Positions 32,644-56,257 of a DNA stretch of 64,000 bases are shown here, in pieces. Numbering within the stretch: the first letter of the stretch is position 1; each line of letters opens with the position of its first letter. Under the pieces are notes generated by a model. The model ran no database searches. It had not been told where the DNA came from and was given only the letters and a program-made list of their open reading frames with translations. The DNA lies in the IMG/VR virus record IMGVR_UViG_3300032675_000001, positions 124,001-188,000 of that record; one strand, written 5' to 3'. The position numbers were made by a program, and so were the translations under genes.

Positions 32644-33660
32644 ATGTCGAACCTATTCAAAAAAGCAGCAGTATTCACCGACATACACTTTGGACTAAAG
32701 AGCAATAGCCTGCAACACAATCAAGATTGTGCAGACTTTGTTGATTGGTTTATAGAGAAGGCAAAATCTGAAGGGTGTGAAACGTGTTTGTTTTTGGGTG
32801 ATTGGAATCACCACAGAGCAAGCATTAACATTCACACCCTCCAGTTTGGTCTTCGTGCATTAGAAAAACTCAATGCATCGTTTGAAAAAGTGTATTTCAT
32901 TCCCGGCAACCATGATCTCTACTACCGAGACCGTAGAGACATTCATTCAGTTGAGTGGGCATCTCATCTGCCTAATGTGACCATCGTAAACGATTGGTTC
33001 AGTGAAGGCAATGTTGTGATCGCTCCTTGGCTGGTGGGTGAAGACTATAAGAACCTACCCAAACTAAAGGGTAAGTATCTTTTCTCGCATATGGAACTAC
33101 CAAACTTCTATATGAACGCAATGGTTGAAATGCCAGATCATGGCGAAGTCAACCTTGATCACATCAAACACTTTGATCGCGTATTTTCTGGACACTTCCA
33201 CAAGCGCCAATCCAAGAAAAACGTCTGGTATATTGGTAATGCCTTCCCGCATAACTATGCAGATGCTGGTGATGATGCGCGTGGTATGATGATATTGGAA
33301 TGGGACCAAGAACCTGAGTTTTATTCATGGCCCGGACAGCCAATGTTCCGTGTATACAAACTCAGTGAGATTCTTGACAATCCAGAAGGATTACTTCTTC
33401 CGAAGTCAAACGTGAGAGTTCATCTTGATATTGACATCTCATACGAAGAAGCAAACTTTATCCGAGAAACTTTAATCCCGACATACAGTCTTCGTGAAAT
33501 GGCACTTATTCCAGTAAAGAATAGTGAACATTCACAAGACTTGGCACCGGGAGAACTAAAGTTTGAGTCCGTTGACCAGATTGTATTAGAAAGTATAAAT
33601 AACTTAGAAAGTTCCACCTTCGATAGGAATTTACTAAGGAGCATATATGATAATCTGTGA
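32644..33660 (+). CDS. Recombination nuclease, gp47/Mre11/SbcD-like
   Basis: Metallophosphoesterase motifs DIH, GD, GNHD, H, SGHFH. Confidence 0.92.
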   Translation: MSNLFKKAAVFTDIHFGLKSNSLQHNQDCADFVDWFIEKAKSEGCETCLFLGDWNHHRASINIHTLQFGLRALEKLNASFEKVYFIPGNHDLYYRDRRDIHSVEWASHLPNVTIVNDWFSEGNVVIAPWLVGEDYKNLPKLKGKYLFSHMELPNFYMNAMVEMPDHGEVNLDHIKHFDRVFSGHFHKRQSKKNVWYIGNAFPHNYADAGDDARGMMILEWDQEPEFYSWPGQPMFRVYKLSEILDNPEGLLLPKSNVRVHLDIDISYEEANFIRETLIPTYSLREMALIPVKNSEHSQDLAPGELKFESVDQIVLESINNLESSTFDRNLLRSIYDNL

Positions 33661-34615
33661 GTATTGTAAATTAGAGGCAGCGCACACCTTCAAAAACGGA
33701 ATTCATTGTTGCAGTAAAAATGTGTCTGGGTGTCCAGAAATCCGAGCAAGACGAGAGAATACCGCTATGGTGAAATACGGAGACAAAAACTTCAAAAACC
33801 ACACCAAAGCAAAAAAAACTAAGCTAACACGGTACGGTGATGAAAATTATAATAATCGCCAGCAAGCAGAAGCAACGACAACTAAAATGTATGGAGTTTC
33901 CAATGTTAGTAAAATAGAAGACATAAAAGTAGCGAAACAATCTACCTTTAGTAAAAACTATCCTATAGGGTCATCCGAAAGAACTGACTTAGGTAATACC
34001 AGGGCAATCTCTTGGAAATCGAATGTTGTGTCCGAGATTACGGACAAAATAAAAACTACGTGCGCAGATAGGTATGGAGTGGACAATCCGAATAAAAACC
34101 CAGATATCGTTTCTAAACGAAAGCAAACAAACTTGGCTAGATACGGACAGCAGCCCGGATTCGGCACGGAGAAGTTTAAAAACACCATTAGACAAAAATA
34201 CGGGGTGGAGAATGTCTCGCAACTCGCAGAAATTCACGAAAGACAACAGCGACCTAATTGGAAATCATACACTCTTCCTTCCGGAAAAATTATTAAGGTG
34301 CAAGGATACGAAAACTTAGCGCTGGATGCATTGATGTCGGTGTATGACGAAAATGATGTTATTACGGTTAGGAAAGAAATACCGGCGGTTTGGTATGAAC
34401 ACGATAACATACGCAGAAGGTATTATCCAGATATGTTAGTTGTGCCTACCAACACGATAATAGAAGTTAAATCGGAATACATTTTTAAAAATAATGAAGA
34501 AGTCAACATGAAGAAAAAAGATGCATGTTTATCCATGGGGCTGGCATTTGAGTTTTGGATATACGAATCAAAAACACACGAACTAAGAAAGCTAATATAT
34601 CCCGCATGTCAATAA
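33647..34615 (+). CDS. Putative free-standing homing endonuclease with a C-terminal PD-(D/E)xK domain
   Basis: N-terminal Cys cluster; repeated KYGVxNxS DNA-binding-like motifs; YYPD...IIEVKS; inserted between gp47 and gp46 and overlapping both. Confidence 0.7.
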   Translation: MIICEYCKLEAAHTFKNGIHCCSKNVSGCPEIRARRENTAMVKYGDKNFKNHTKAKKTKLTRYGDENYNNRQQAEATTTKMYGVSNVSKIEDIKVAKQSTFSKNYPIGSSERTDLGNTRAISWKSNVVSEITDKIKTTCADRYGVDNPNKNPDIVSKRKQTNLARYGQQPGFGTEKFKNTIRQKYGVENVSQLAEIHERQQRPNWKSYTLPSGKIIKVQGYENLALDALMSVYDENDVITVRKEIPAVWYEHDNIRRRYYPDMLVVPTNTIIEVKSEYIFKNNEEVNMKKKDACLSMGLAFEFWIYESKTHELRKLIYPACQ

Positions 34616-36761: not shown

Positions 36762-37517
36762 ATGAATATTTATCATAAAACATTACCATATATCTATAAA
36801 TGGATACATATACCTACCGGAAAATGGTATATTGGTTCTAAAGTGAGAACTGGATGGAACCCCTCGCGACATGAAGAGTATATATGTTCGAGCAAAGAAG
36901 TCAAGCCATTGGTTATGGAAAATCGAGATGATTGGGAATATCATATTCTGCATACTGGTGATGCAGCTTATATTGTCAATTTGGAAAAAATTATACTGTC
37001 TGAATTAGATGCTAGGAATGACCCAATGAGTTATAACCAGCACAACGGGGATGGACTATACAATAGATATGGTGTTAAAGAAAATGAAAACACTAGACTT
37101 AAGAAAAGTGCCGCTCGCTTAGCCGAAAAAAACCCAATGTATGGTAAAAGAGGTGACCTGTCCCCACATTATGGTAAATCACATTCATCTTGTTGGAGAA
37201 AAAACCAAAGCATTGGTCTAAAATTGTATAATGAAAATAGACCTGCTGAGCATAACAATAATATTTCAAAAGCATTGAAGGGTAACCCAAAACTATCAGA
37301 AAAAATGATTGGAGAAAATAACCCGCGTTATGGCAAACCAGCTTTAGAGCACAACAAACGCGCCTCGTCAATTGCAAATTCAGGAAACAATAACCCCATG
37401 AAAAAACCAGAACATCAGCGTACATGTGAACATTGCTGTAAAACCGTGGCTAAAAATCATTATACACTATTCCATCGGGACAAATGTAGATCAAAACCTG
37501 CAACCGACATAGAATAA
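36762..37517 (+). CDS. GIY-YIG-like (Seg-type) homing endonuclease with NUMOD3-like repeats
   Basis: YIYKW...WYIGS; NPMYGK/NPRYGK repeats; C-terminal CxxC..H..C. Confidence 0.75.
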   Translation: MNIYHKTLPYIYKWIHIPTGKWYIGSKVRTGWNPSRHEEYICSSKEVKPLVMENRDDWEYHILHTGDAAYIVNLEKIILSELDARNDPMSYNQHNGDGLYNRYGVKENENTRLKKSAARLAEKNPMYGKRGDLSPHYGKSHSSCWRKNQSIGLKLYNENRPAEHNNNISKALKGNPKLSEKMIGENNPRYGKPALEHNKRASSIANSGNNNPMKKPEHQRTCEHCCKTVAKNHYTLFHRDKCRSKPATDIE

Positions 37518-38805: not shown

Positions 38806-39036
38806 TTAGAAATAAGGCAGTTGTGATTGCTTGGTTATTTCTAGATTGTTCTCAATGATTTCATTGATAGACTGACGTTCAAAAGCAGACATATTTAATA
38901 TGTCCTCATAAGAAGCACCTCCACGCATGTGCCATGCCATGGATAATGCTCCTTTCTTCACTCCCTCAACTTCAACTTCGTATTGTTTAATAAGCTTCTG
39001 AATTTCCTCGGGTGTGGAATGCAGAAGCTTTATTCG
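38806..39036 (-). CDS. gp51-like / gpT-like segment, probably translated by -1 frameshift from the upstream gene
   Basis: 76-codon open -1 frame RIKLLHSTPEEIQKL...WHMRGG.SYEDILNMS.FER...LPYF with no start codon in its first ~25 codons; not in the ORF track. Confidence 0.7.
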   Translation of the reverse strand, partial: RIKLLHSTPEEIQKLIKQYEVEVEGVKKGALSMAWHMRGGASYEDILNMSAFERQSINEIIENNLEITKQSQLPYF

Positions 39037-39854
39037 AAAAAATCCACTGGGCTTAGTGTGAATGGTTGTTCATATTCGTGCCCACATCCGTCACACTTAA
39101 TGTTAAGTGGTTTTATTTCTGTTGCGGCTTTAAGTTCACCGTTGTAATCTCTGATCTTATTGTAGACATTTCTATCACAGTTCTTCAAGTAATCAAGGAT
39201 GAATTCTTTTTGATCTACTCTAACGCTTGAAGTTTGAATATACTCAATAGTCTGTGTCAATAGATTCATTGTGAGAGCAGTAATCTTTTCTAACGTATCT
39301 TTAGTGATTCTGTTCTTTTCTTCTTCTGATTCTGAGTTTTCAATGTTCACAAATGTACGCTGAAGTTCAAAATTTGCCAAAGCGGCATCATTCATTTCCT
39401 TGTAAGTAAGAGGTTTGAACTTGATGCTCAAGTCTCCAACAGTCAAAGTGTTATCGTAATTTCCTGGCTTTAAGGTATTAAGAATAGGAATAAGATTGAC
39501 GCCATAAGTGTTGGTTTCTGTGCACGAAGGGCATGAAGTTTCAAGCTCAAGTACATCACCGGAAGAAGCAATCTTGATGGCGATCAAAATAGCATCCATA
39601 TCGTTGCTGCTAATTTTCCAAGGGTCTTTGATCACTGGAACACAACTTTTCACAATGTCAACGAGTGCCGTACCATTAAAAAGTGCGTCCGGTGTTCTGG
39701 TGGTGATTTCATCAATAGCAGTCATGGGATATACTGGGATTTCTCCAGTTTCAGGGATGTCAATCATGCCATCCACGTAATCTTTTCCTCCGGAAGGAAG
39801 CTTAAAATATACAGCCGGTCTTCGGAAGTATTGCTTTAGTGGGTTGTTGTTCAT
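39030..39854 (-). CDS. Baseplate hub / tail assembly chaperone, gp26-like
   Basis: NPLKQYFRRP..Y..LPS.G, PMTAIDEI, two CxxC pairs, ends DFFE. Confidence 0.7.
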   Translation of the reverse strand: MNNNPLKQYFRRPAVYFKLPSGGKDYVDGMIDIPETGEIPVYPMTAIDEITTRTPDALFNGTALVDIVKSCVPVIKDPWKISSNDMDAILIAIKIASSGDVLELETSCPSCTETNTYGVNLIPILNTLKPGNYDNTLTVGDLSIKFKPLTYKEMNDAALANFELQRTFVNIENSESEEEKNRITKDTLEKITALTMNLLTQTIEYIQTSSVRVDQKEFILDYLKNCDRNVYNKIRDYNGELKAATEIKPLNIKCDGCGHEYEQPFTLSPVDFFE

Positions 39855-39951
39855 TTCAGTTCCTCATAAAAAATGGAGTATTTACTAGTAATAAATAGTT
39901 ACGTAATATTTAGTGCTCAAAAAGTAGCAAAAAATAAAGTTCGGATTGACA

Positions 39952-42900
39952 ATGGACGCAGACTTAATTGCTCAGATAAATGATAAGCTTAAAGAGATGA
40001 ATGACTTGCTTACTAAGCAAGGTTCTGTTATTACAAGTCAAGTAAATGCAATAAACAGTTCTACATCAGCAACTAAAAATTTGTATTCGTCCACTCAAAC
40101 CCTATCAAATTCAGAGAAAGAGGCTGATTCCACCTATACTGGAGTTTCTAAAAAAAGTGAAGCTGCGGCAAAAGCATCTTCTGTTATGGATGAATCTACC
40201 ACTCAGCTTACTAAGGCATTGAATGACGGGAGCACCGCCGTCCTCGGCTTTGCGCACAGTATGTTGGATACCACTCCGGGCTTAACAAAATACGCCAGAA
40301 GTGTTACCGATATGGCCCTTGTTGTTTCTGACCTTGCCGCTCCATTTGGGCTGTTAGGTAAAGCAGCGGGCGGAATAGTGGCTATTCTCGGTACTCTTGT
40401 GGGTGCTTCATTTAAGTATTCAGATGCTGCTGTAAAAAGTTACGACGAGATATCAAAGGCTGGGGCTGGCATAGGAGAAAGTGCTGATAGCTTTTTAAAG
40501 CTTGCACATCAGGCAAATTTATCATCTCAAAACATGGGAATACTGTCAAAAGGAGTAACTGACTTAGGTGATAAGCTTTTATTCTTGGGTTCAACTACGT
40601 CAAAGGGCGCTGAAACCTTTGTTAAAATGGCTTCGTTTAACGACAAGACCTTAAAGCAATACAGAAATCTAGGTTTTACTCAACAGGACCTTATTGAGTC
40701 TCAAGAAAAATATTTAGAATTGCAGGCACAATCTGGCGCTGATATGAGAAAAAGCCCACAAGAGTTGCAGAAGGCTTCTCTTGAATGGATTGACCAACAG
40801 AATGAACTTGCTGAACTAACCGGAATCAATGCAAAAACTCAACAAGAAGCATTAGCTAAGGCTTTAGCTCAGGCCAACTTCCAAGCATATATTACCGGAG
40901 AAGAACAAAAGAAAAATGATGCCATCAAAAGGGGAGATACCGCATTAGCTGCTGAAATAGAACAACGAATAAAAGTAAAGAAAGAAGCAGCAACCTATGC
41001 GGAAGCAACATACGGTGCAGTAAAAGCCACCGCCATTCTTCAAGGTATATCTACAGATGGTGCAACAGTAATAGGACAGAACCAAGCCGCTCTTATGCGT
41101 AGTGGTCAAAATGTTGCAGAATATAATGAAATGTTGAATAAAGGTCAAAGTGTAGTTAAACGTATGTCTTCGGATAACGTTAATGCTATAGACCAATATA
41201 GAAAAAACTATGGTGAAATGGGTCAGGCTGCTGGTGAAGCATCCAGAAACATGATGAAAATCAACATGATTGACAATCAATCAATCGCAGCAGCCGCAAG
41301 AGACTCTCAACTGAAAACTACAGCAGGAAAGAGACAACAAACAAAAGAAGAACAAGAAGCTGCAGCCGCCCTTGAACGTGAGAAAAAATATAATGGCGAA
41401 ATCATGGCTAATAGGGCGCAGCAGGAACAATATGAACGTCAAATTCGTCAAGCACTTGATCCTATACTAGGAAAGTTATCAGATCAAATCAATGTACTTG
41501 TTTTAAAGCTTCAGCCGGTGATCACTAAAGTTATCGGTCTAATCAGTAAGAATATGAATTATGTAATTGATGTCGCAAAAGGTTTAGCAGTAACGTTTGG
41601 TATTATGTTTGGTGCGGTAGCGATAGGTAAAGTAGTAGGGTCAGTAAGATCATTTAAAGATGGTTTTTCTAAATGGAGAAAAGGTGAAAGTGGTGCAGTA
41701 GGTAGTGCAAACAATGCTGCTTGGGTAGTTTTTGATGAAAAGAGTGAAGTATTAAGTAAATTGTCAGGTGGAGGAGGAACTTCCGGGATACCCAAAGTTA
41801 GAAAAGCAGATTTGCTTGATAAAAATGGTAAAGTTTTACAAGGTGGCGCACTGCAAGAGAGAATGAAAAAGCTGGCAAGACAGCAAGGTCTTTCTGGGCA
41901 TACGGAAAATAGTGAACAAGAACTTGGTGGAACATTAGGCAATTTAGTTGATGTACTAAAATACGCTTCCAAAAATGCAGCAGATATTATAAAAGGTGGT
42001 GCAGCATTAGGACTTTCTTTAGCCGCTGTGGGTGGTGGAGCCGCCGCCGCCATATGGATTGTGGGTAAAGCTTTACCAACTTTTGCAAATGGTATGAAAT
42101 CGTTCAACGAGGTTAATGGTAAAAATCTTGAGGGCGTTGGCATAGGGTTGGCTGGAATCGGAAGCGGCATCCTAATGATGTCTAGTGGCGCAGTATTGGG
42201 CGTTTTAAGTACTATTGCAACATTGGTTGGTGGAAAAACCCCATTACAAAAAGCGGCAGATGAACTTTATCAGTTCCAAAAGCTAAACATAGATTCTAAA
42301 AAAGTTAAAGCAAATGGAGAAGCTGCTATAGTATTTGCTAAAGCACTAGCTGGTGCTGTGGCTATATCTGAGTTCAGTAAGCTTACTGACAGTTTAAATG
42401 GTTTTTTTGAGTCTAAACCTCCTTTTAAGGATTTTGAGGATTTCTCAAAACTAAACATAAATGAACCTAAAGTAAAAAATAATGCTACAGCATTCAAGGA
42501 GTTTGCCGAAGCGATGGATTCATACAAAGGTGGTGGTACCGTTGGTACTGTAACTACCGCTATAGCTGAATCTGTTGCTAACCATTTCAAGGTAAATCCT
42601 CCTATCAAGGAATTTCAGTATTTTTCAACATTGAAGATTGATCCTATTCAAACAAAAAAGAATGCAACAGCATTCAAGTATTTTTCTGAGGCAATCGCAG
42701 AATACAAAGGAACTAATAGTGGGGTAATAGACTCACTTAATGCTCTCATCGGAAGCTCGTTGAATAAGTTGTTCAATTTGGATGGGCCGATAGATTCTTT
42801 TGTAAACTTCACAAACAAGTCGTTTGGTCCAAATGCAGAAAAAAATGCTGACGCTTTCTACAAATTTGCTTCGGCTATGGGAATACTGTCAGGTTCAACT

Positions 42901-43797
42901 AATGCAACTGGCTCGGCAAACTCCGCAGTAAACGGGGTGGTTGGAGCTATAGGCGGTGCACTAAGTTCCGGTGCAACTATATTGGGCGCTGCGGCAGGTG
43001 CGGCAGCAGATTGGGTTTCTAGCGTATTCAAGTTAGGAAAACCAAAACCAGAATATGTTGGTGTTATGCAGATCGCAAAAAAATCTGGTGATCCTCATCC
43101 GGAAATAACTGCAGCACAGTGGGCATTGGAATCCGGATGGGGTAAACATATGTCTGGTAAAAACAACCCATTTGGGCAAAAAGCAAAAAAGGATAAAGGT
43201 GGAAATCCTATAGAGCCAGCCACTTTACGCAGAACGCGAGAAGTTATAGGAGGAAAGGAGATATTCATCAATGATTATTTCAAAGATTATCCTACACAAG
43301 ATGCTGCAATTGCTGAACATGCACAAAAGTGGACAGCAAGAAAAACCCAGCCGGGATCATCCCCGCTAGAAGCTGCCGCAGCAATTAAAGCGGCAGGATA
43401 TGCCACTGACCCAAATTATGTTAAATCATTGGCTAATATTGTTGCAAGTAATGGTATTGATCCAAAAGCGCCACTGAAAGCCGCAAAAGGTGGTATTTTT
43501 GATGGTCCAATAACTGGATATCCAATGGAACTTCACGGAACTGAAATTGTAGTACCAATGGATAAAGACTCCTTACTAAAAAGACTGGCCACACAAAATC
43601 ATGACGAACAGGAGGATTTGTTACATTCACTTATGTCGCCTGAAACAAAAATCCATCATGAAACAGAATCTGATGTTATTGTAAAAATGGATACGGAAAT
43701 GAAGATGGTTTTACTTGATAAGTTAAGTAAAATGCTATCGGTCATTGATAGTAGACATGAAACTGCTAAAAAAATACTACAACACACACGTACATAA
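39952..43797 (+). CDS. Tape-measure-like protein 1 with a C-terminal GH73 glucosaminidase (FlgJ-like) domain
   Basis: Long helical Ala/Lys-rich body with hydrophobic segments; AAQWALESGWG, NNPFGQK and GYATDPNY motifs; ATG 39952 aligns with the paralog start. Confidence 0.75.
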   Translation: MDADLIAQINDKLKEMNDLLTKQGSVITSQVNAINSSTSATKNLYSSTQTLSNSEKEADSTYTGVSKKSEAAAKASSVMDESTTQLTKALNDGSTAVLGFAHSMLDTTPGLTKYARSVTDMALVVSDLAAPFGLLGKAAGGIVAILGTLVGASFKYSDAAVKSYDEISKAGAGIGESADSFLKLAHQANLSSQNMGILSKGVTDLGDKLLFLGSTTSKGAETFVKMASFNDKTLKQYRNLGFTQQDLIESQEKYLELQAQSGADMRKSPQELQKASLEWIDQQNELAELTGINAKTQQEALAKALAQANFQAYITGEEQKKNDAIKRGDTALAAEIEQRIKVKKEAATYAEATYGAVKATAILQGISTDGATVIGQNQAALMRSGQNVAEYNEMLNKGQSVVKRMSSDNVNAIDQYRKNYGEMGQAAGEASRNMMKINMIDNQSIAAAARDSQLKTTAGKRQQTKEEQEAAAALEREKKYNGEIMANRAQQEQYERQIRQALDPILGKLSDQINVLVLKLQPVITKVIGLISKNMNYVIDVAKGLAVTFGIMFGAVAIGKVVGSVRSFKDGFSKWRKGESGAVGSANNAAWVVFDEKSEVLSKLSGGGGTSGIPKVRKADLLDKNGKVLQGGALQERMKKLARQQGLSGHTENSEQELGGTLGNLVDVLKYASKNAADIIKGGAALGLSLAAVGGGAAAAIWIVGKALPTFANGMKSFNEVNGKNLEGVGIGLAGIGSGILMMSSGAVLGVLSTIATLVGGKTPLQKAADELYQFQKLNIDSKKVKANGEAAIVFAKALAGAVAISEFSKLTDSLNGFFESKPPFKDFEDFSKLNINEPKVKNNATAFKEFAEAMDSYKGGGTVGTVTTAIAESVANHFKVNPPIKEFQYFSTLKIDPIQTKKNATAFKYFSEAIAEYKGTNSGVIDSLNALIGSSLNKLFNLDGPIDSFVNFTNKSFGPNAEKNADAFYKFASAMGILSGSTNATGSANSAVNGVVGAIGGALSSGATILGAAAGAAADWVSSVFKLGKPKPEYVGVMQIAKKSGDPHPEITAAQWALESGWGKHMSGKNNPFGQKAKKDKGGNPIEPATLRRTREVIGGKEIFINDYFKDYPTQDAAIAEHAQKWTARKTQPGSSPLEAAAAIKAAGYATDPNYVKSLANIVASNGIDPKAPLKAAKGGIFDGPITGYPMELHGTEIVVPMDKDSLLKRLATQNHDEQEDLLHSLMSPETKIHHETESDVIVKMDTEMKMVLLDKLSKMLSVIDSRHETAKKILQHTRT

Positions 43798-43829
43798 GAA
43801 ATATTAAATACATTGTAACGAGGAAATAG

Positions 43830-46800
43830 ATGGATTCAGAGTTAGAAGCACAGTTAAATGAACAGTTACAGCAGATGTCTGATCTATTGAGTCAGCAGAA
43901 TTCTGCTATGTCTGCTCAAATTAAGGCAATGAATGATGCCGTCAACGCATCTAACGGTCAGTCTTCTGCTGCTAAAAATTTATCCTCCGCTGAAAATGAT
44001 GCCGTAAAAAATACTAGCACAAGTAATAAAAAGGTAGAGTCTGCCGGAAAAGCCATGGACATGGTTAAAGAGGCAAATGAACGCTTATCGACCTCTTTAG
44101 ATAAAGGCAAATCAGCCATATCAGGATTTGCTGTAGCAATGACTGATGTTACCCCTGGAATGGCAAAATATGCAGCAAGCTTAAAAGATGCTACACTTGC
44201 TGTTGCTACCATGGCTTCTGGTTTTGGTCCTTTAGGAAAAGCAACAGAAGGTATTCTTGGTGTTTTTGCTAGTCTTGTTACCGCCGCCACCAAATACAAT
44301 GATGCAGTGGTTCAGGGTTATGATGATGTTTCTAAGCTAGGAGCAGGCATAGGAACGAGTGCGGAAGACATAGTTAAACTTGGACATAATGCAGGTCTTT
44401 CATCACAAAACTTATCGCTGTTGACAAAGAACGCTGCATCTTTGGGAATGAATATTCGCTCGCTTGGAACAACAACTTCCAAAGGTTTAGATACATTTGG
44501 AAAGATGATAGCAGTTGGTGATACCACTCTTGAGCAATATCGTAAGTTGGGTTTTTCTCAAGAGGACTTGATTGAAGCGCAGACTGCATATATTGACATA
44601 CAAACGCAGGCTGGTGCAGATTTAAAGAAAAGTCCAGAAGAACTCCAAAAAGCATCTTTGGCTTATATTGACAATCTTAATGTCATGGCTGAAATGACTG
44701 GTGTTTCCGTAAAGCAACAACAGGATGCACAGAAACAAGCATTAGCACAAGAAAACTTTGATGTCTATATGTCAGGACTGCAAGCCAAAAAGGCAGAAGC
44801 ATTAAAATCGGGAAACAAGGCGGAAGCGGATAGATTACAAAAAATTTATGATGCTAAGTTAGAACTTGCAACTCAGGCTAAAGCAAACCTTGATCCAAAA
44901 CAAGCACAAGGAGTTTTAGAAGGCATTTCTACTAATGGTAAGACCATTATGTCTAAAGAAGTTGCCAAGCTTGAAATGTCTGGTATTCATATTAGTAAAA
45001 TGAATGATGAATTGAACAAGGGCAACAAGCAAACCGGAAGATTACTGGGAGAAAATGCGCAGGCAGTAGAAAACTATAGAAAACGATTCGGTGATTTGGG
45101 GACTGCTGCCGGGGATGCCTCCATTGGAATGATGAATGCATTCAATCTAGGTGTAAAAAGTTTTGAGTCTGGTAATAAATTTTATGATCTCAGAACAAAA
45201 GAAGGACAAGAGGCTTGGCAAAAACAATATGATGCCACAGTAGAAAAGCAGAAAAAAGATAAAGAAAGTCATGATAAATTACTGGACCAAAGAGCGGCTC
45301 TGGAAAAGAATGAAAGACAAGCAAGATTAGCGTTTGATGATTTGCTTTCAAAACTTTCTGCTATGTTTACTAAGGTTGCTTTAAAAGCAATGCCTCTAAT
45401 GGTATCGGCTTTAACTTTCATTTCTAATCATTTTGATACTATTGTTACTGTAACTAAAACTCTTGGTATTGCACTGGCAGCACTCGCAGCAGTTATGGCT
45501 GGTGCGAAAGTTGTTAACTTTTTCCGATCATTTACTGATAATATGAAAGGAATATTTTTAGGAAAACAAACACTAGGATCATCTACTACCAAACCAATGC
45601 ATGTTCGTATGGCAGGATCAGGTAAAGCGGTTACAACTGGTTCCGGCGCAGTAAGTAAAATGATTGGAAAATCAGCAAGTGCTGGGAATTTACTAAATGA
45701 AGCGGAAGAAGTTGCCGGTAAAAAAGGTAACAAAAATGGGATGCTTGGTAAAGCAGAACAAGGCATGTCTGGGATATCAAAAATGTCCTCCGCACCGGGA
45801 GCAGACAAATCTGGAATTTTTCTGGAAGGACTAGCCAAAGGACTTCAAGCATTAGGTAAAGCTGCCCCAGAGGTTATTGAAGGTTCTGGTGCTCTAGCAG
45901 CAGCAATTGTTGCTATTGGCGCTGCAGTGGGTGCAGCAGGGTTTATACTTGGTAAAACTTTACCATATCTTGCAACGGGATTGCATGATTTTGATAAAGT
46001 TAATGGTGAAAATCTAAAAGATGTTGGTATTGGTATGGCAGGTCTCGGCGCAGGTATACTTGCCATGGGAGGTTCTACTGTTGTTAATGCATTTGGTAGT
46101 ATCGTCAGTATGTTCAGTCAGGGAAAGGATGAAAAAAATGATCCTATCAAAAAACTTGGTGAACAGATTGTCAATTTTCAAAATATACCTATTAAACCAG
46201 ATAAAGTTGAAAAGAACGCAAAAGCTTTCGTGGCGTTTTCCCAAGCATTTGCTCAAGCTGCCGCAACTTCTTCTTTGGGAACTGTTGCGTCTGGTATAGC
46301 AAATGGCGTTAGTGGATTTTTTAGTAAGGAGCCACCATTCAAAAAATTCAAAGAATTCTCTGAGTTAAAGATAAACGAAGTCCAAACAAAAAAGAATGCA
46401 TTGGCGTTTAAAGAATTTGCTGAGGCAATGTCTTCTTATCATGGCAATGGTCCATTGGGAGCACTTGGTAGCATCAGTACGGCACTTGCTGATGCTGTGT
46501 ACAAGCATTTTCAAATGAAACCACCGGTTGATGAATTTGCGCATTTTGCAAGTCTCCCTATTGATCCAAAAAAGGCAAAATCTAATGCGGAAGCATTTGT
46601 TGATTTCGCAAACGCGATGTCCAACTATAAAGCAGCGCCGGGAGCATTAGATGCTTTAAGTCAACTAGTTGGTGGTGGATTAATGAAACTGGTTGGTGTA
46701 GGAGGACCAGTTGATGCTTTTGCTGATTTTGCAAAAAGAGACTTTGGTCCAAATATGGAAAAAAATGCAGACGCATTTCAAAAATATGCCGAAAGTATGG

Positions 46801-47714
46801 CTGCGTCTGGTGGAATCGCAGGATCAAGTCCTGGTGGCGGTGGCGGCGGTGGCGCTGGTGGATCAAGTGGCGCTGGTGGCAGTGCACTACAATCAGGAGT
46901 AAGTGCAGGACAGGCTGCAGTTGGATTTGTTGGTGGTCTAGTTAGTGGTGCAGGAAATTTAGTGTCTAATGCATTTGATTGGGCAAAAGCAGGGATTACA
47001 GGAAAACCAACTGACGTTTTGAATTTCACAGGCGAATCAGGTCAATATGCAAATTTTGCAGCACTTGACCCTGCCATGCAACAGGCTGTTATTCTATCAG
47101 CAACAGATTATAAAAAAGCAACCGGAAGAAAAATGACAATAAACAGCGCAAGACGTTCTGTTGCAGACCAAGAAAGATTGTGGGCGGAAACTGTAAAGTT
47201 GGGACATCCGGGCATAGGTCCACATGGCATGTTAGTTGCGAAGCCACCAAGACTTGGTGGTAATCCTCCTCATTTAAGAGGTAATGCCATTGATATTCAA
47301 GAAGGTGTTTCTGATTCGGCTAAAGCAATACCTATTCTCAAAGCACATAACTTAAAACAAACATATGGTGGAAAAGACCCGGTTCACTTTGATTTAAAAG
47401 CAAAAGATGGTGGTGTATTTGATGGTCCACGTGGTGGATATCCTATTGCAATGCATGGTTCCGAAATGATCTCTCCTTTGAAAAAGGATTCCATTCTGAT
47501 GAAACTTGCTAAAACGTCTGCATCAAAAGTAAATGCAACTGATGCGAAAAAGAAAATATCACAAGTAAGTCAAACACATGGATCAAGTCAAGTATTATAT
47601 TCAGAAAACATGAGACTTAATAAAGAGATAGCTGAAAAGCTGGATAGAGTTATTACGGTTCTTGAAAGCGATCACGATACTCAGCATAAGATATTGCGTG
47701 AAGTTCGCATTTAA
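43830..47714 (+). CDS. Tape-measure-like protein 2 with a C-terminal M15-like Zn peptidase domain
   Basis: Colinear paralog of the previous ORF; INSARRS..Q..L, H.RGNAID and DPVHF motifs. Confidence 0.75.
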   Translation: MDSELEAQLNEQLQQMSDLLSQQNSAMSAQIKAMNDAVNASNGQSSAAKNLSSAENDAVKNTSTSNKKVESAGKAMDMVKEANERLSTSLDKGKSAISGFAVAMTDVTPGMAKYAASLKDATLAVATMASGFGPLGKATEGILGVFASLVTAATKYNDAVVQGYDDVSKLGAGIGTSAEDIVKLGHNAGLSSQNLSLLTKNAASLGMNIRSLGTTTSKGLDTFGKMIAVGDTTLEQYRKLGFSQEDLIEAQTAYIDIQTQAGADLKKSPEELQKASLAYIDNLNVMAEMTGVSVKQQQDAQKQALAQENFDVYMSGLQAKKAEALKSGNKAEADRLQKIYDAKLELATQAKANLDPKQAQGVLEGISTNGKTIMSKEVAKLEMSGIHISKMNDELNKGNKQTGRLLGENAQAVENYRKRFGDLGTAAGDASIGMMNAFNLGVKSFESGNKFYDLRTKEGQEAWQKQYDATVEKQKKDKESHDKLLDQRAALEKNERQARLAFDDLLSKLSAMFTKVALKAMPLMVSALTFISNHFDTIVTVTKTLGIALAALAAVMAGAKVVNFFRSFTDNMKGIFLGKQTLGSSTTKPMHVRMAGSGKAVTTGSGAVSKMIGKSASAGNLLNEAEEVAGKKGNKNGMLGKAEQGMSGISKMSSAPGADKSGIFLEGLAKGLQALGKAAPEVIEGSGALAAAIVAIGAAVGAAGFILGKTLPYLATGLHDFDKVNGENLKDVGIGMAGLGAGILAMGGSTVVNAFGSIVSMFSQGKDEKNDPIKKLGEQIVNFQNIPIKPDKVEKNAKAFVAFSQAFAQAAATSSLGTVASGIANGVSGFFSKEPPFKKFKEFSELKINEVQTKKNALAFKEFAEAMSSYHGNGPLGALGSISTALADAVYKHFQMKPPVDEFAHFASLPIDPKKAKSNAEAFVDFANAMSNYKAAPGALDALSQLVGGGLMKLVGVGGPVDAFADFAKRDFGPNMEKNADAFQKYAESMAASGGIAGSSPGGGGGGGAGGSSGAGGSALQSGVSAGQAAVGFVGGLVSGAGNLVSNAFDWAKAGITGKPTDVLNFTGESGQYANFAALDPAMQQAVILSATDYKKATGRKMTINSARRSVADQERLWAETVKLGHPGIGPHGMLVAKPPRLGGNPPHLRGNAIDIQEGVSDSAKAIPILKAHNLKQTYGGKDPVHFDLKAKDGGVFDGPRGGYPIAMHGSEMISPLKKDSILMKLAKTSASKVNATDAKKKISQVSQTHGSSQVLYSENMRLNKEIAEKLDRVITVLESDHDTQHKILREVRI

Positions 47715-47747: not shown

Positions 47748-49541
47748 ATGGCATTTAAAAAGAAATTCATTAATAAGAGTGGTGTTTCCTCACCAATCTC
47801 CGGTGCAAATAGCAATGCTGGTGCATGGAACGGTTCACCGGGTCAGAATGGTATGCCAACTGGTGGCTGGAACAATGATGATTTCGGCTACAAGAATTAT
47901 ATGTCAAGGCTTCCGGAAGTCTATACTGGGCACCCAAACAGAATTGAACGATACAATCAGTATGAAATGATGGACGTTGATGCGGAAATAAATGCATGTT
48001 TGGACATTCTGGCAGAGTTTTCAACCCAACGTAACGAACACAATAGAACTCCATTTGAGATTGAGTTTAGAGATGAACCTACTCCACATGAAGTAGAACT
48101 TCTTACCAAGCAGCTACAGCAGTGGTGCAAACTCAATGAGTTTGACGTTCGTATGTTCAAGATATTCCGTAATGTTGTTAAGTATGGCGACCAAGTATTT
48201 GTTCGTGATCCAGAAACATTCAAGTTGTTCTGGGTTGATATGGTCAAAGTTATTAAAGTTATCGTTAACGAATCAGAAGGTAAGAAACCGGAACAGTATG
48301 TTATTAAAGACATCAATATTAACTTACAGAACCTGTCAGTAGCACAAAAAACAAATACCGACTTTGCTGCTAATCCAGCAACAGGACTTGGTGGATCAGG
48401 CGGAGGCACAAACACTCCATATACTGTTCCAGCAATGCCATATAATACATCTGGATCACGTTTTACTCTTGGGCAATCAGAATCGGCCATTGACTCAAAA
48501 CATGTTGTTCACCTTTCATTAACAGAGGGTCTTGATCGCTTCTGGCCATTCGGACAGAGCATTTTAGAGAACATCTTCAAAGTTTATAAACAGAAAGAAC
48601 TGTTAGAAGACGCTGTTCTTATCTATCGTGTTCAGAGAGCGCCGGAACGTAGAGTCTTTAAGATTGACGTTGGTAACATGCCATCACACATGGCAATGGC
48701 ATTCGTTGATCGTGTCAAGAACGAAATTCACCAGAGACGTATTCCCTCCATTTATGGTGGACAGTCTGTAGTTGATGCAAGCTATAATCCGCTGTCAATG
48801 AACGAAGACTATTTCTTCCCTGTTACGGCAGAAGGTCGCGGTTCAACTGTTGATATTCTTCCGGGTGGACAGAATCTTGGTGAAATTGATGACTTGAAAT
48901 ATTTCAACAATCGTCTTGCTCGTGGTCTTCGTGTTCCAAGTTCATATCTGCCAACTGGACCAGATGATAATACTACTCCAATGAATGATGGTCGTGTTGG
49001 TACTGCCATGATTCAAGAGTTCAGGTTCAACCAGTACTGCGAACGATTACAGAACTATATCTGTTTGAAACTTGATGAAGAGTTCAAGTTATTCTTGCGT
49101 TGGAGAGGGTTTAATATTGATACTGGTCTCTTTAGTATCATGTTCAACGCTCCACAAAACTTTGCATCTTACCGTCAGGCAGAAATGGATACTGCTCGTG
49201 TTTCCACTTTTGCTACGATGGAAGCATTTCCGTATATCTCAAAACGTTTTGCACTTGAAAGATTCCTAGGTCTTACCGAAGAAGAAATCAAGAAAAATGA
49301 AAAGATGTGGGCAGAAGAAAATGCTGATGAGCAGCTTGATGAACCACAGGGTTCCGATCTTAGAAACATTGGTGTTTCAACTGGTGACTTTGAAGCAGAT
49401 TCGGATACCGCAGATCAGATTGAGCAATCACAATCCGATATGGATGGAGAAATGGGTGTAGCTGGTCCAGTAGCATCAGACATTGGTGCACAAGGTGCAG
49501 CAGGAGGCGGCGCAGCAGCCGGTCCAGTCGGTAATAGTTAA
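47748..49541 (+). CDS. Portal protein, T4 gp20-like
   Basis: LLEDAVLIYRVQRAPERRVFKIDVGNMP; EDYFFP...GRGS.V..LPGGQNLGEIDD. Confidence 0.95.
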   Translation: MAFKKKFINKSGVSSPISGANSNAGAWNGSPGQNGMPTGGWNNDDFGYKNYMSRLPEVYTGHPNRIERYNQYEMMDVDAEINACLDILAEFSTQRNEHNRTPFEIEFRDEPTPHEVELLTKQLQQWCKLNEFDVRMFKIFRNVVKYGDQVFVRDPETFKLFWVDMVKVIKVIVNESEGKKPEQYVIKDININLQNLSVAQKTNTDFAANPATGLGGSGGGTNTPYTVPAMPYNTSGSRFTLGQSESAIDSKHVVHLSLTEGLDRFWPFGQSILENIFKVYKQKELLEDAVLIYRVQRAPERRVFKIDVGNMPSHMAMAFVDRVKNEIHQRRIPSIYGGQSVVDASYNPLSMNEDYFFPVTAEGRGSTVDILPGGQNLGEIDDLKYFNNRLARGLRVPSSYLPTGPDDNTTPMNDGRVGTAMIQEFRFNQYCERLQNYICLKLDEEFKLFLRWRGFNIDTGLFSIMFNAPQNFASYRQAEMDTARVSTFATMEAFPYISKRFALERFLGLTEEEIKKNEKMWAEENADEQLDEPQGSDLRNIGVSTGDFEADSDTADQIEQSQSDMDGEMGVAGPVASDIGAQGAAGGGAAAGPVGNS

Positions 49542-53894: not shown

Positions 53895-54650
53895 ATGTTC
53901 AAAGAAAACAAATACACCAAACATTACATGCTTCTCATCGATAATGCAAGAAATCGTAAACTTCCACTAGAGCAGTATAAAGAACGCCATCACATCATAC
54001 CCCAATCATTAGGCGGCTCGAATGATAAATCTAATTTAGTTTGGCTTACTGGACGAGAACATGCACTTTGTCATTGGGCACTATTAAAGATGACAGAAGG
54101 AGAAAATCGTGCTAAAATGTCATATGCATTTAATGGAATGAACGCAGAGAATGAGTTCCAACAGAGATACCATTCTCGAATTATAACGCGAGCATATGAA
54201 CGGCATCGGATTGAACATGCTAAAGTACATTCTGAAAGAATGAAGGGTAAAACTGCGTGGAACAAAGGCAGAAAATTGGAAGGCGAAGAGTTAGAACAGC
54301 ACCTAGAACGAACACGTAACAGAATTATTGATCCAGTTAAACAGGCTGAGGGGCAATTAAAAAGGATTGCTAAAGTAACTGGCCAAAAACGCACAGAAGA
54401 AACAAAAATAAAAATGAGTATTGCTTCAACAGGTAAACTAAAGGGAGCAATGTCAGATGATCATAAAGCCGCCATAAGTGCAAGCGGGAAGGGTAAACCT
54501 AAGAAAGAAGGACATGCTGAAAATGTTCGTAAAGCCAACATAGGTAACGTGTCTATTAACAAAAATGGGATTGAGAAAAAAGTCAAACGTGATACTCTTG
54601 ATCAGTGGTTGAGTGAAGGCTGGAGTCTAGGCGGAAGGAAAAGAAAATGA
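53895..54650 (+). CDS. HNH homing endonuclease (Mob-like) with NUMOD3-like repeats
   Basis: ERHHIIPQSLGGSN...NLV.LT.REH...H; AWNKG and RTEETK.KMS motifs. Confidence 0.85.
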   Translation: MFKENKYTKHYMLLIDNARNRKLPLEQYKERHHIIPQSLGGSNDKSNLVWLTGREHALCHWALLKMTEGENRAKMSYAFNGMNAENEFQQRYHSRIITRAYERHRIEHAKVHSERMKGKTAWNKGRKLEGEELEQHLERTRNRIIDPVKQAEGQLKRIAKVTGQKRTEETKIKMSIASTGKLKGAMSDDHKAAISASGKGKPKKEGHAENVRKANIGNVSINKNGIEKKVKRDTLDQWLSEGWSLGGRKRK

Positions 54651-55618: not shown

Positions 55619-55672
55619 CGAGAGTACGTATACATTGGCACGGTGATAACTGTAAACAACGATAAATACACT

Positions 55673-56245
55673 ATGCGTATATCAGAACTCCTCACCGAAT
55701 CAGAAATGTTAGATGAAATCAGCCGTCCCTCGGGCAGAATGGCACAGCATATTTTAAAAAAAGCTGGTTACACTGTGTTAGGTAGTGGTTCAAATGCTGA
55801 CGTATATGCCAAACCTAACGAAAACACGGTTCTTAAATTGTTCAACAATGAAGACACAGCATATCAAGATTTCGTATACTTAACTATTAGTAACCCTAAT
55901 CCGCACTTCCCGAAATTCAAGGGGAAGATGATGAAAGTTACTGATGACTATTCTGCTATTCGTATGGAAAGATTGACTCCTTTACCGGACAATTACGAAA
56001 CAAGATTGTACGCTACGAGAATCTCGCTCTACACAAAACTGATTCAGAACAAATCAGGTCGTGCAGCTAATATGAATACCGAAGAAATAATGCGAGACAT
56101 TGATGAGATTGAAAAAGAACAACCCGGCATCAAATATGCTTGTGCCATCATAGGTAACAATCTCAAAAAGGAAATAATAGACATTCATAATGAGAACATT
56201 ATGATGCGTGGAAATGTTTTGGTCATCACCGATCCGGCCATTTAA
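55673..56245 (+). CDS. Protein-kinase-like protein (probable start 55673, MRISELLTE)
   Basis: Gly loop LGSGSNADVY, VLK, MERL, DIHNENIM catalytic loop, ITDP; late box 4 nt upstream of the ATG. Confidence 0.7.
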   Translation: MRISELLTESEMLDEISRPSGRMAQHILKKAGYTVLGSGSNADVYAKPNENTVLKLFNNEDTAYQDFVYLTISNPNPHFPKFKGKMMKVTDDYSAIRMERLTPLPDNYETRLYATRISLYTKLIQNKSGRAANMNTEEIMRDIDEIEKEQPGIKYACAIIGNNLKKEIIDIHNENIMMRGNVLVITDPAI

Positions 56246-56257
56246 CTAAATATAAAA

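What the first reader, a model, noticed from the sequence alone, without database searches (positions are those of the whole stretch)
39952..47714. Tandem tape-measure paralogs with swapped peptidoglycan-hydrolase cassettes
Seen: two proteins of nearly equal length (~1281 and 1294 aa) are colinear (e.g. QYRNLGFTQQDLIE vs QYRKLGFSQEDLIE; internal K.NA.AF..FA.AM repeats). Both end in a shared GG.FDGP..GYP...HG.E motif. Just before that motif, one carries a GH73 glucosaminidase domain (~43070-43470) and the other an M15-like peptidase (~47040-47400). Inference: a heteromeric tape measure that delivers both glycan-cutting and peptide-cutting activity, or two alternative tail types.
Basis: partly seen in the sequence, partly recalled or inferred. 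Interest (0 to 1): 0.6.

Follow-up and report, generated by a model that had tools for sequence, protein, structure and literature searches.

The report
Tandem tape-measure genes, complementary wall-cutting domains
A 360-kb freshwater jumbo phage carries two adjacent copies of its putative tail tape-measure gene, one ending in a sugar-chain-cutting and the other in a peptide-cutting cell-wall enzyme. Related uncultured phages keep this split even though the enzyme modules themselves have been swapped many times.

Summary
Window 39952-43797 (1281 aa; 1283 from an upstream TTG) and 43830-47714 (1294 aa) are collinear paralogs: 40% identity over about 1,020 residues and 35% over the last 113. Between these lies a non-homologous cassette. 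Paralog 1 has GH73 (Pfam 2e-16, catalytic Glu present). Paralog 2 has an M15/LAS zinc peptidase, shown by fold search and invariant H-x6-D and D-x-x-H motifs.

The window belongs to a lake-water Rak2/GAP32/PA5oct-like jumbo myovirus. The gene family always sits between a T4-type hub gene and the portal gene. Its N-terminus is homologous to the single-copy 720-800-aa virion structural protein of cultured relatives (hhalign 97%). Distant members hit tape-measure PHROGs.

Ten complete tandem pairs were found. In nine, gene 1 carries a glycan-cleaving fold (GH73, GH24, SLT, other lysozyme-like) and gene 2 a peptidase (three LAS types, M23). An eleventh, partial pair has Amidase_2 in gene 2. Single-copy relatives often carry both classes in one protein.

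Paralog lengths co-vary (r = 0.97), both are under purifying selection (dN/dS about 0.05), and the genes are mosaics of exchangeable modules. Tape-measure identity is inferred (about 0.75). Whether the two proteins share one tail is untested.

The parts
39030..39854 (-). T4-type baseplate hub gene (gp26/gp51-like), divergently oriented from paralog 1
   Evidence: Pfam T4_baseplate PF12322 at E 3.6e-16 and PHROG 150 'baseplate hub'. It is found immediately upstream of the family gene(s) in every locus that reaches that far.
39952..43797 (+). Tape-measure-like paralog 1. It is 1281 aa from the ATG, or 1283 aa from the TTG at 39946. Residue numbers in this report use the 1283-aa form, P0001.
   Evidence: Its ortholog in L006 is 79% identical overall. 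dN/dS is 0.056 over aa 120-600.
39961..40911 (+). N-terminal conserved module of paralog 1 (aa 6-322). It is homologous to the N-terminus of the virion structural protein of cultured Rak2-like phages.
   Evidence: hhalign of A2 vs A7 gives prob 97.3%, E 1.8e-11, columns 6-322 vs 7-301. Invariant F134-G135-x-x-G138, D167, G243, L279 and T292-G293.
41563..42234 (+). Hydrophobic, Gly/Ala-rich segments of paralog 1 (about aa 540-567, 685-710, 733-763). These are candidate membrane-inserting or channel segments.
   Evidence: Kyte-Doolittle 19-residue windows of at least 1.5. AF2 confidence is low here. Distant relatives give a Gly-zipper hit in the equivalent region.
42283..42900 (+). Array of ~60-aa helical-hairpin repeats of paralog 1, each ending K.NA.AF..F..AM
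   Evidence: The strict regex finds repeat cores at aa 846, 906 and 967, and a looser copy lies near aa 786. AF2 shows repeated helix pairs at 784-981.
43069..43452 (+). GH73 N-acetylglucosaminidase cassette of paralog 1 (aa 1042-1169)
   Evidence: Pfam PF01832 at E 2.3e-16. ALESGWG with E1062 and YATD at 1152. It is 95% identical to the cassette of L006 gene 1.
43489..43797 (+). C-terminal shared module of paralog 1: the motif GGIFDGPITGYPMELHGTEIVVP, a linker, and the terminal amphipathic helix KLSKMLSVIDSRHETAKKILQHTRT
   Evidence: 35% identical to the same module of paralog 2. Conserved family-wide as GGxFxGPxxGYPxxLHGxExVxP ... KLDxxIDxLExxxxTQxKIL.
43798..43829 (+). 32-nt intergenic spacer, with GAGGA 6 nt upstream of the ATG of paralog 2
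   Evidence: Sequence read directly. The junction is bridged by independent contigs X17 record 4 and X18 record 13.
43830..47714 (+). Tape-measure-like paralog 2 (1294 aa, P0002)
   Evidence: Its ortholog in L006 is 69% identical overall. dN/dS is 0.046 over aa 60-600.
45438..46085 (+). Hydrophobic, Gly/Ala-rich segments of paralog 2 (about aa 537-565, 681-712, 734-752)
   Evidence: Kyte-Doolittle windows, maximum 2.39.
46122..46814 (+). Four ~60-aa repeats of paralog 2
   Evidence: Regex hits at aa 796, 856, 919 and 979.
47007..47399 (+). M15/LAS zinc-peptidase cassette of paralog 2 (about aa 1060-1190). Putative zinc and catalytic residues are H1148, D1155, D1183 and H1186, plus S1106 and R1109.
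   Evidence: Alignment A6 shows these residues invariant. The AF2 model matches ChiX 5opz, Ply500 2vo9, LdcB, VanXYc, LysECD7 and EndoT5 by Foldseek. Pfam gives weak VanY at E 0.016.
47409..47714 (+). C-terminal shared module of paralog 2: GGVFDGPRGGYPIAMHGSEMISP ... KLDRVITVLESDHDTQHKILREVRI
47748..49541 (+). T4-type portal gene. It is the invariant downstream neighbour of the family gene(s).
   Evidence: PHROG 213 portal at 7e-105. Portal_T4 in every related locus that extends downstream of the family gene(s).

Best explanation
The two genes are a conserved tandem duplication of the phage's tape-measure-type protein, the functional analogue of T4 gp29.

Shared architecture of the two paralogs:
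- an N-terminal helical module of about 320 aa, shared with all Rak2-like jumbo phages;
- an all-alpha body of about 1,000 residues in total, with three hydrophobic Gly/Ala-rich segments and ~60-aa repeats;
- a Gly-rich linker;
- one exchangeable peptidoglycan-hydrolase cassette;
- a conserved C-terminal motif followed by an amphipathic helix.

Inferred mechanism:
- Both proteins are made late from one transcription unit.
- Both are loaded into the tail-tube lumen through the same N- and C-terminal contacts, most likely into the same tail. This could be as a mixed oligomer or as co-resident oligomers.
- On sheath contraction they are expelled through the tube tip.
- Paralog 1 then cuts the glycan strand (GH73) and paralog 2 cuts the peptide stem or cross-link (M15/LAS).
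- The hydrophobic segments help form the conduit across the periplasm and inner membrane.

In this phage the gp5-like spike has no recognisable lysozyme, so the tape-measure cassettes may be the virion's wall-opening enzymes.

The duplication let the two bond classes, which single-copy relatives carry in one chain, be split between two length-matched chains. Recombination then replaced cassettes repeatedly but kept the class at each gene position.

Shown: paralogy, cassette identities and catalytic motifs, synteny, the family-wide position rule, mosaicism, purifying selection.
Inferred: tape-measure role, virion presence, co-assembly, ejection, order of events.
For: Paralogy:
- E 4e-212 between the two genes.

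Cassettes:
- GH73, Pfam 2e-16.
- M15 fold with invariant zinc ligands.

Synteny:
- The order hub(-), family gene(s)(+), portal(+) holds in every uncultured locus that spans both flanks, about 30 distinct loci, and in cultured GAP32, CBB, 121Q, K64-1, EJP2 and PA5oct.
- This resembles T4's arrangement 26(-) | 51-27-28-29(+).

Homology to virion proteins:
- hhalign of A2 vs A7 gives 97.3%, E 1.8e-11.
- A7 members are annotated as structural proteins. PA5oct gp148 carries an ESI-MS/MS note. CBB gp251 is 'virion structural protein' and 121Q gp597 is 'structural protein'.

Tape-measure link:
- Family members L038 and L032 match the family HMM at E 1e-150 and 1e-161.
- They hit tape-measure PHROGs 794 (7e-14), 167 (3e-13), 58 (3e-12) and 23574 (2.5e-11) over long collinear stretches.
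- Searches with PHROGs 167 and 794 find no other tape-measure candidate in the 360-kb genome.
- The AF2 model of aa 1-1000 is all-alpha.

Position rule:
- 9 of 10 complete pairs have a glycosidase fold in gene 1 and a peptidase in gene 2.
- The cassette types are labelled.
- Type-by-position Fisher test, p = 0.005.

Both classes in one chain in single-copy relatives:
- L011, L025 and L029 combine GH19 with VanY. L038 combines LysM, GH19 and VanY.

Other support:
- Paralog lengths co-vary, Pearson r = 0.97, n = 10.
- dN/dS is 0.056 and 0.046.
- Module mosaicism and horizontal cassette exchange.
- No GH24 or SLT elsewhere in the genome, and the spike has no lysozyme hit.
Against: - P0001 and P0002 themselves hit no tape-measure family in Pfam or PHROGs.
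- The cultured homologues belong to phrog_14121, labelled only 'virion structural protein'.
- There is no similarity to T4 gp29.
- The genes are co-oriented with the head-gene block and abut the portal gene.
- There are no proteomic, RNA or imaging data for this phage; no RNA run holds it.
- Co-assembly is not shown. The complex prediction of the C-termini gave no verdict.
- If the tape measure is a strict trimer, a 1:1 heteromer is impossible.
- L010 breaks the rule: gene 1 has a peptidase and gene 2 has no cassette.
- The length correlation uses 10 phylogenetically related pairs.
- Reciprocal monophyly of 'firsts' and 'seconds' is recovered only within subgroups.
Confidence: 0.55

Rival explanations
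1. Alternative tails. Each paralog forms its own homo-oligomeric tape measure, so a burst contains two virion subpopulations. One is armed with a glycosidase and the other with a peptidase. This would be bet-hedging against host peptidoglycan modifications such as O-acetylation, N-deacetylation or altered stems.
For: Tape measures in solved tails are homotrimers as far as I know (own knowledge, not tested here), and a trimer cannot be 1:1. The two paralogs are only 22-58% identical along their length, with no recent gene conversion in this phage, so homotypic specificity could have evolved. The complementary classes also fit bet-hedging.
Against: Single-copy relatives put both classes in one chain, so co-delivery appears to be the selected state. 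The tight length matching of the paralogs (r = 0.97) is required for co-residence in one tube but not for separate virions. In some lineages the N-terminal modules of the two paralogs group together (L046, 96*). That suggests homogenisation, as expected for partners that share contacts.
Confidence: 0.25
2. Not tape measures. The family would be a set of ejected internal or pilot proteins encoded with the head genes, comparable to T7 gp14-16 or the ejection proteins of giant phages. They would be stored in the capsid or portal channel and would carry wall hydrolases into the periplasm.
For: The genes lie directly upstream of, and are co-oriented with, the portal, protease, scaffold and capsid genes. 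PHROGs files the cultured homologues under 'head and packaging / virion structural protein'. P0001 and P0002 give no direct tape-measure family hit.
Against: Distant family members hit four tape-measure PHROGs over hundreds of collinear residues. The divergent pairing with the hub gene mirrors T4's 26 | 51-27-28-29 arrangement. Searches with two TMP PHROG models found no other tape-measure candidate in the complete genome. The cultured homologues are 720-800 aa, which fits their ~120-140 nm tails at about 1.5-1.7 A per residue (tail lengths are from my own knowledge). One cultured homologue is annotated 'pore-forming tail tip protein'.
Confidence: 0.15
3. Only one paralog is the working ruler. 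The other is a redundant or decaying copy, or has been recruited for another role such as a lysis enzyme.
For: In L010 gene 2 has lost its cassette. In L007 gene 2 is split into two ORFs.
Against: Both copies show dN/dS of about 0.05. Both keep every module, including intact catalytic motifs. The pair persists in at least 10 divergent lineages. The paralog lengths co-vary.
Confidence: 0.05

Closest known systems
phrog_14121 virion structural protein of cultured Rak2-like jumbo phages (GAP32_244, CBB gp251, 121Q gp597, the K64-1 homologue, 2.275.O gp437; PA5oct gp148 as a more distant member of alignment A7 with no PHROG hit)
   Same: The genomic slot is identical: hub gene on the minus strand, this gene, then the portal gene. 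The N-terminal ~300 residues are homologous (hhalign 97.3%, E 1.8e-11). The body is all-helical.
   Different: The cultured proteins are single-copy, 619-798 aa, and the annotations and PHROG scans seen here show no hydrolase cassette in them. They lack the C-terminal GGxFxGP...KLDxxI module as far as HMM search shows. Their spike protein carries the GH24 lysozyme instead.
T4 gp29 (baseplate hub subunit and tail-length determinator)
   Same: The inferred role is the same. The local gene arrangement is similar, next to a divergently transcribed hub gene. Both belong to T4-type contractile tails.
   Different: No detectable sequence similarity. gp29 is 590 aa, single-copy and has no hydrolase domain. 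In T4 the lysozyme is on gp5.
Tape-measure proteins with built-in muralytic domains: T5 pb2, mycobacteriophage TM4 Tmp, SPbeta CwlP (SLT + M23), phiKZ gp181. This list is from my own knowledge and from the pb2 reference cited in PMC10253068.
   Same: A long helical ruler with hydrophobic segments and C-terminal peptidoglycan hydrolase(s). Single-copy family members with GH19 + VanY resemble the two-enzyme CwlP layout.
   Different: Those are single genes. Here the gene is duplicated in tandem, the two bond classes are partitioned by gene position, and the host virus is a T4-like jumbo myovirus.
Modular endolysins and virion-associated lysins (domain shuffling of enzymatically active domains)
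   Same: Catalytic cassettes are exchanged horizontally between otherwise diverged genes. The WIN gene 2 cassette is 72-78% identical to cassettes in genes whose bodies are only about 50% identical.
   Different: The cassette is embedded between conserved structural modules of a roughly 1,300-aa virion protein, and the exchange respects a position-specific class constraint.

Membership tests
Phage tail tape-measure proteins (functional class) | Sequence homology to an established tape-measure family | tested here: inconclusive
   P0001 and P0002 give no hit. Family members L038 and L032 hit PHROGs 794, 167, 58 and 23574 at 7e-14 to 3.5e-8, so the link is transitive. GAP32_244 hits phrog_167 only at E 0.028.
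Phage tail tape-measure proteins (functional class) | Long, almost entirely alpha-helical protein with hydrophobic or Gly-rich central segments and internal repeats | tested here: met
   The AF2 model of aa 1-1000 has helices only, apart from a few isolated bridge residues. Kyte-Doolittle hydrophobic windows and ~60-aa repeats are present in both paralogs.
Phage tail tape-measure proteins (functional class) | Encoded in the tail or hub module, and the only such protein in the genome | tested here: inconclusive
   The genes are adjacent to and divergent from the hub gene, as in T4's 26 | ...29 arrangement. They are also adjacent to the portal and head genes. Searches with PHROGs 167 and 794 find no other candidate. 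Only two families were searched.
Phage tail tape-measure proteins (functional class) | Protein length sets tail length, and the protein is present in the tube lumen | not testable with these tools
   The phage is uncultured, known only from lake metagenomes. There are no virion images or proteomes.
GH73 N-acetylglucosaminidase (PF01832) | Pfam score above the gathering cut-off, and the catalytic Glu in the A-L-E-S-G-W-G motif plus the YATD Tyr | tested here: met
   61 bits against a cut-off of 30.2. E1062 and Y1152 are present. That these residues are catalytic rests on my own knowledge of FlgJ, Auto and AcmA.
M15 / LAS zinc peptidases (VanY, Ply500, ChiX, EndoT5 type) | LAS fold with the H-x(6)-D and D/E-x-x-H zinc-binding and catalytic motifs | tested here: met
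   Foldseek top hits are 5opz, 2vo9, 4jid, 6akv and 4mus, with prob 0.99-1.0. H1148-x6-D1155 and D1183-x-x-H1186 are invariant in 10 homologues. The Pfam VanY score is below the cut-off (15.4 vs 25 bits), so this is a divergent member.
T4 gp29 family | Detectable sequence or profile similarity to T4 gp29 | tested here: not met
   hhalign of A2 and of A7 vs gp29 gives prob 0.2-0.5%. The gp29 side was a single sequence, so sensitivity was limited.
phrog_14121 (Rak2-like virion structural protein) | Profile similarity and the conserved slot between the hub and portal genes | tested here: met
   hhalign of A2 vs A7 gives 97.3%, E 1.8e-11 over ~290 columns. Synteny is shown. A direct hmmscan of P0001 and P0002 aa 1-1000 against PHROGs gives no hit, so they are remote members at best, through the N-terminal module only.

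The most novel reading that the evidence does not exclude
An obligately heteromeric tape measure. The two length-matched paralogs would co-assemble in every tail and co-deliver a glycan-cleaving and a peptide-cleaving enzyme. A structural constraint would fix which enzyme class each chain can carry. This would explain why the class stays tied to gene position while the cassette families are replaced again and again. It would be the first tape measure built from two different gene products, and a natural plug-and-play scaffold for virion-delivered lysins.
Probability: 0.4. Interest if true: 0.75.

Novelty: new variant of a known kind. Interest (0 to 1): 0.62.

Why it matters
Tape measures are treated as single-gene homo-oligomeric rulers. 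A conserved two-gene version with a division of labour raises three questions. What is the stoichiometry inside the tail tube? How do globular enzymes travel through it? Why do some phages need both bond specificities at entry?

The family is also a natural catalogue of at least 12 interchangeable wall-hydrolase cassettes, flanked by defined recombination joints: a Gly-rich linker upstream and the GGxFxGP motif downstream. This is useful for understanding, and possibly for engineering, virion-associated lysins.

It further shows a shift of the entry lysin from the gp5-type spike in cultured Rak2-like phages to the tape measure in a freshwater lineage of jumbo phages.

Tried and rejected
- **Default BLASTP of the two proteins** showed only the C-terminal HSP because of composition adjustment. 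tblastn and unadjusted BLASTP resolved this.
- **megablast and tblastn of the genes against 50,697 phage records** found no homologue of the body. Only the GH73 domain hit, in cyanophage lysozyme or hypothetical genes.
- **Pairwise BLASTP to PA5oct gp148 and to 2.275.O gp437 and gp438** found nothing.
- **HMM search of those two genomes with A2** found nothing.
- **Single-sequence hhalign** was weak: 5.6% for PA5oct gp148 and 20% for GAP32_244. Only profile against profile worked.
- **T4 gp29** showed no similarity.
- **Foldseek of the 1,000-residue body model** against the PDB gave no meaningful match.
- **PDB profile searches for cassette clusters 2 and 3** found nothing significant. Cluster 3 was assigned to LAS peptidases from its SGVR...H.DGSAID...HIHLD motifs only. 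Cluster 2 was assigned as lysozyme-like from ESGG...GKYQ and a JGI name only.
- **Complex prediction of the two C-terminal modules** (P0001 1170-1283 with P0002 1181-1294) gave no verdict. The score was 0.22 against a mark of 0.34. This is not evidence either way.
- **RNA evidence.** No RNA run holds the stretch.
- **AU test for a single clade of all 'first' genes** did not finish in the time limit.
- **Literature searches** for two, duplicated or paralogous tape measures found no precedent in the held library. This does not prove that none exists.
- **Assembly artefact** was considered and rejected. At 40% identity the copies are too divergent to be collapsed strain variants, and the junction recurs in independent contigs.
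- **A read-through fusion of the two genes** was considered and rejected. They are in different frames and are separated by a TAA stop.

Full report
**1. What is in the sequence**

- Two adjacent ORFs on the + strand fill window 39946/39952-43797 and 43830-47714.
- Gene 1 (P0001) is 1283 aa from a TTG, or 1281 aa from the ATG at 39952. The database copy, P0003, uses the ATG. Gene 2 (P0002) is 1294 aa.
- A 32-nt spacer with a GAGGA Shine-Dalgarno separates them.
- tblastn of P0001 on its own genome finds P0002 at E 4e-212, 40% identity over aa 3-1026. It finds it again at 35% over aa 1170-1282. The stretch in between is not alignable.
- The unalignable stretch of P0001 is a GH73 glucosaminidase. 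Pfam gives 2.3e-16 for aa 1042-1169, and ALESGWG (E1062) and YATD are present.
- The unalignable stretch of P0002 scores only weakly against VanY.
  - A ten-sequence alignment shows S1106, R1109, H1148, D1155, D1183 and H1186 invariant.
  - The AF2 model has a cassette core with pLDDT 78-94.
  - Its best PDB matches are ChiX, Ply500, LdcB, VanXYc, LysECD7 and EndoT5, all M15/LAS zinc peptidases.

**2. Genomic setting**

- The window is bases 124001-188000 of a 360,683-bp virus record with direct terminal repeats. It is found in lake-water metagenomes.
- The major capsid protein is 64-67% identical to those of Vibrio phage 2.275.O, PA5oct, GAP32 and relatives. The phage is therefore a Rak2-like, T4-distant jumbo myovirus.
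- Around the pair lie:
  - a gp55-like late sigma factor, SbcD, SbcC and RusA;
  - a T4_baseplate hub gene on the minus strand (39030-39854);
  - then the pair;
  - then portal, prohead protease, scaffold-like and capsid genes.
- The junction between the two genes is bridged by contigs from independent runs.

**3. The family**

- Word searches found about 50 relatives, all from metagenomes.
- Contig look-ups and an IMG/VR scan gave about 40 loci.
- An HMM of the family finds its members in one slot only. The hub gene on the minus strand is upstream and the T4-type portal gene is downstream.
- Ten complete tandem pairs were recovered, plus partial ones. About 20 distinct loci have a single gene of 823-1671 aa.
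- Cultured relatives have one gene of 619-798 aa in the same slot in GAP32, CBB, 121Q, K64-1, EJP2 and PA5oct. In 2.275.O it lies inverted next to the hub gene. These are annotated as virion structural proteins, and PA5oct gp148 carries an ESI-MS/MS note.
- Pairwise and HMM searches do not connect them to the lake family. Profile against profile does: 97.3% probability, E 1.8e-11, N-terminal ~300 residues.

**4. Is it a tape measure?**

For:
- Distant but secure family members (L038, L032) hit four tape-measure PHROGs over long collinear stretches.
- The body is all-alpha, with hydrophobic Gly/Ala-rich segments and ~60-aa helical-hairpin repeats.
- The divergent pairing with the hub gene recalls T4's 26 | 51-27-28-29 arrangement.
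- Two tape-measure PHROGs find no other candidate in the complete genome.
- C-terminal muralytic domains are a known tape-measure feature, for example T5 pb2 (reference cited in PMC10253068).

Against:
- P0001 and P0002 hit no tape-measure family directly.
- The cultured homologues are only 'virion structural protein'.
- There is no similarity to T4 gp29.
- The genes abut the head module.

I put the tape-measure reading at about 0.75.

**5. Cassettes and the position rule**

The region between the last repeat and the GGxFxGP motif was extracted, clustered and labelled.

| Pair | Gene 1 cassette | Gene 2 cassette |
|---|---|---|
| This window | GH73 | M15 (type 0a) |
| L006 | GH73 | LAS (cluster 3) |
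| L008 | lysozyme-like (cluster 2) | LAS (type 0b) |
| L043 | lysozyme-like (cluster 2) | LAS (type 0b) |
| L044 | lysozyme-like (cluster 2) | LAS (type 0b) |
| L013 | SLT | M23 |
| L016 | GH24 | M15 (type 0a) |
| L045 | SLT-like | LAS (cluster 3) |
| L046 | SLT-like | LAS (cluster 3) |
| L010 | LAS (type 0b) | none |

- L010 is the only exception among the ten complete pairs.
- L014 is a partial pair whose gene 2 carries Amidase_2.
- Unpaired proteins can be assigned to 'first' or 'second' clades of the tree.
  - About 20 of 21 'firsts' have glycosidase folds. These also include the Enc34-type lysozyme fold (PDB 7Q47; PMC8943055) and GH19.
  - About 22 of 24 'seconds' have a peptidase or amidase, and none has a glycosidase.
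- Counting cassette types rather than genes gives 7:1 against 0:5, Fisher p = 0.005.
- Single-copy relatives frequently carry both classes in one chain. L011, L025 and L029 have GH19 + VanY, and L038 has LysM + GH19 + VanY.

**6. Evolutionary dynamics**

- All paired genes form one clade that excludes the proven single-copy genes (SH-aLRT 95 and 92).
- Within the window's subgroup, 'firsts' and 'seconds' are reciprocally monophyletic on the whole pre-cassette region (99*/99*).
- On the first 600 residues some paralog pairs group together (L046, 96*). The AU test did not finish. The choice between one duplication with later gene conversion and several duplications is open.
- The genes are mosaics.
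  - Gene 2 here is 90-100% identical to L006 gene 2 over aa 60-600, about 60% over 600-1020, and about 20% in the cassette.
  - Its cassette is 72-78% identical to those of L016 gene 2 and P0016, whose bodies are only about 50% identical to it.
  - Gene 1 is 23-55% identical to P0005 in the N-terminal half but 78-95% over aa 660-960 and 80-90% at the C-terminal end.
- Both paralogs are under strong purifying selection against their L006 orthologues, with dN/dS 0.056 and 0.046.
- Paralog lengths co-vary across the ten pairs (1097-1369 aa; Pearson r = 0.97). The pairs are phylogenetically related.

**7. Mechanism**

- Late co-expression, loading into the tail lumen through the shared N- and C-terminal modules, ejection on contraction, and local cutting of both the glycan and the peptide bonds are inferences.
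- Co-residence in one tail is favoured by the length matching, by the complementary classes, and by the two-enzyme single-copy relatives. It is not shown.
- The complex prediction of the C-termini gave no verdict.
- The gp5-like spike of this phage shows only an OB-fold hit and no lysozyme. No GH24 or SLT domain exists anywhere in the genome. Cultured relatives carry GH24 on the spike. The entry lysin therefore seems to have moved to the tape measure in this lineage.

**8. Novelty**

- Muralytic tape measures and cassette shuffling are known.
- A conserved tandem pair of tape-measure paralogs with a position-specific partition of bond classes was not found in the held literature.
- I rate it a new variant of a known kind, with interest about 0.6.

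Noticed in passing
window 84-19064 (-): A single 6326-aa ORF lies next to the gp6-like wedge gene (19073-22444). It is presumably a giant baseplate or fibre protein, like the very large neighbours in PA5oct and 2.275.O.
   Followed up: no
window 22962-27191 (-), and the whole 360-kb genome: The gp5-like central spike (PHROG 13211, weak OB-fold hit) has no lysozyme domain. No PF00959 or PF01464 domain exists anywhere in the genome. Cultured relatives (GAP32_234, 2.275.O gp427) carry GH24 on the spike.
   Followed up: partly
window 24001-26000: A GC-rich island (0.48 against about 0.40 for the window) lies inside the spike gene.
   Followed up: no
window 33647-34615, 36762-37517, 53895-54650: Three homing-endonuclease-like ORFs. 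One lies between SbcD and SbcC and overlaps both, and one lies just after the major capsid gene.
   Followed up: partly
L010:9001-15676: This pair is the exception to the position rule. Gene 1 carries the LAS-type peptidase, and gene 2 has only an 83-residue linker with no cassette.
   Followed up: partly
L007:9532-13401: In a contig nearly identical to L006, gene 2 is split into ORFs of 686 and 577 aa. This is either a frameshift or an assembly error.
   Followed up: no
L046:1230-8846: The first 600 residues of the two paralogs of this phage group together in the tree (SH-aLRT 96). This suggests gene conversion of the N-terminal module between the tandem copies.
   Followed up: partly
L041:129-3578: In this distant single-copy member, the family's GGxFxGPxxGYPxELHGxExVxP motif reads GGITNGMSIAGEAGREAVVPLP. 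From memory this resembles the GEAGPEA..PL motif near the C-terminus of many tape measures. That resemblance was not tested.
   Followed up: no
window 55643-56875: Two adjacent ORFs. The first hits a T7-type protein kinase PHROG, and the equivalent ORFs in relative L009 give faint or weak Phage_T7_kinase Pfam hits. The second ORF has no PHROG hit. They lie downstream of the capsid gene block.
   Followed up: no
PDB 9vvp chain L ('Gp29', 1295 aa): The cluster-1 cassette profile (Enc34-type lysozyme fold) matches the N-terminal ~110 residues of this large solved phage protein at E 3e-12. No paper on the entry was found in the library.
   Followed up: partly
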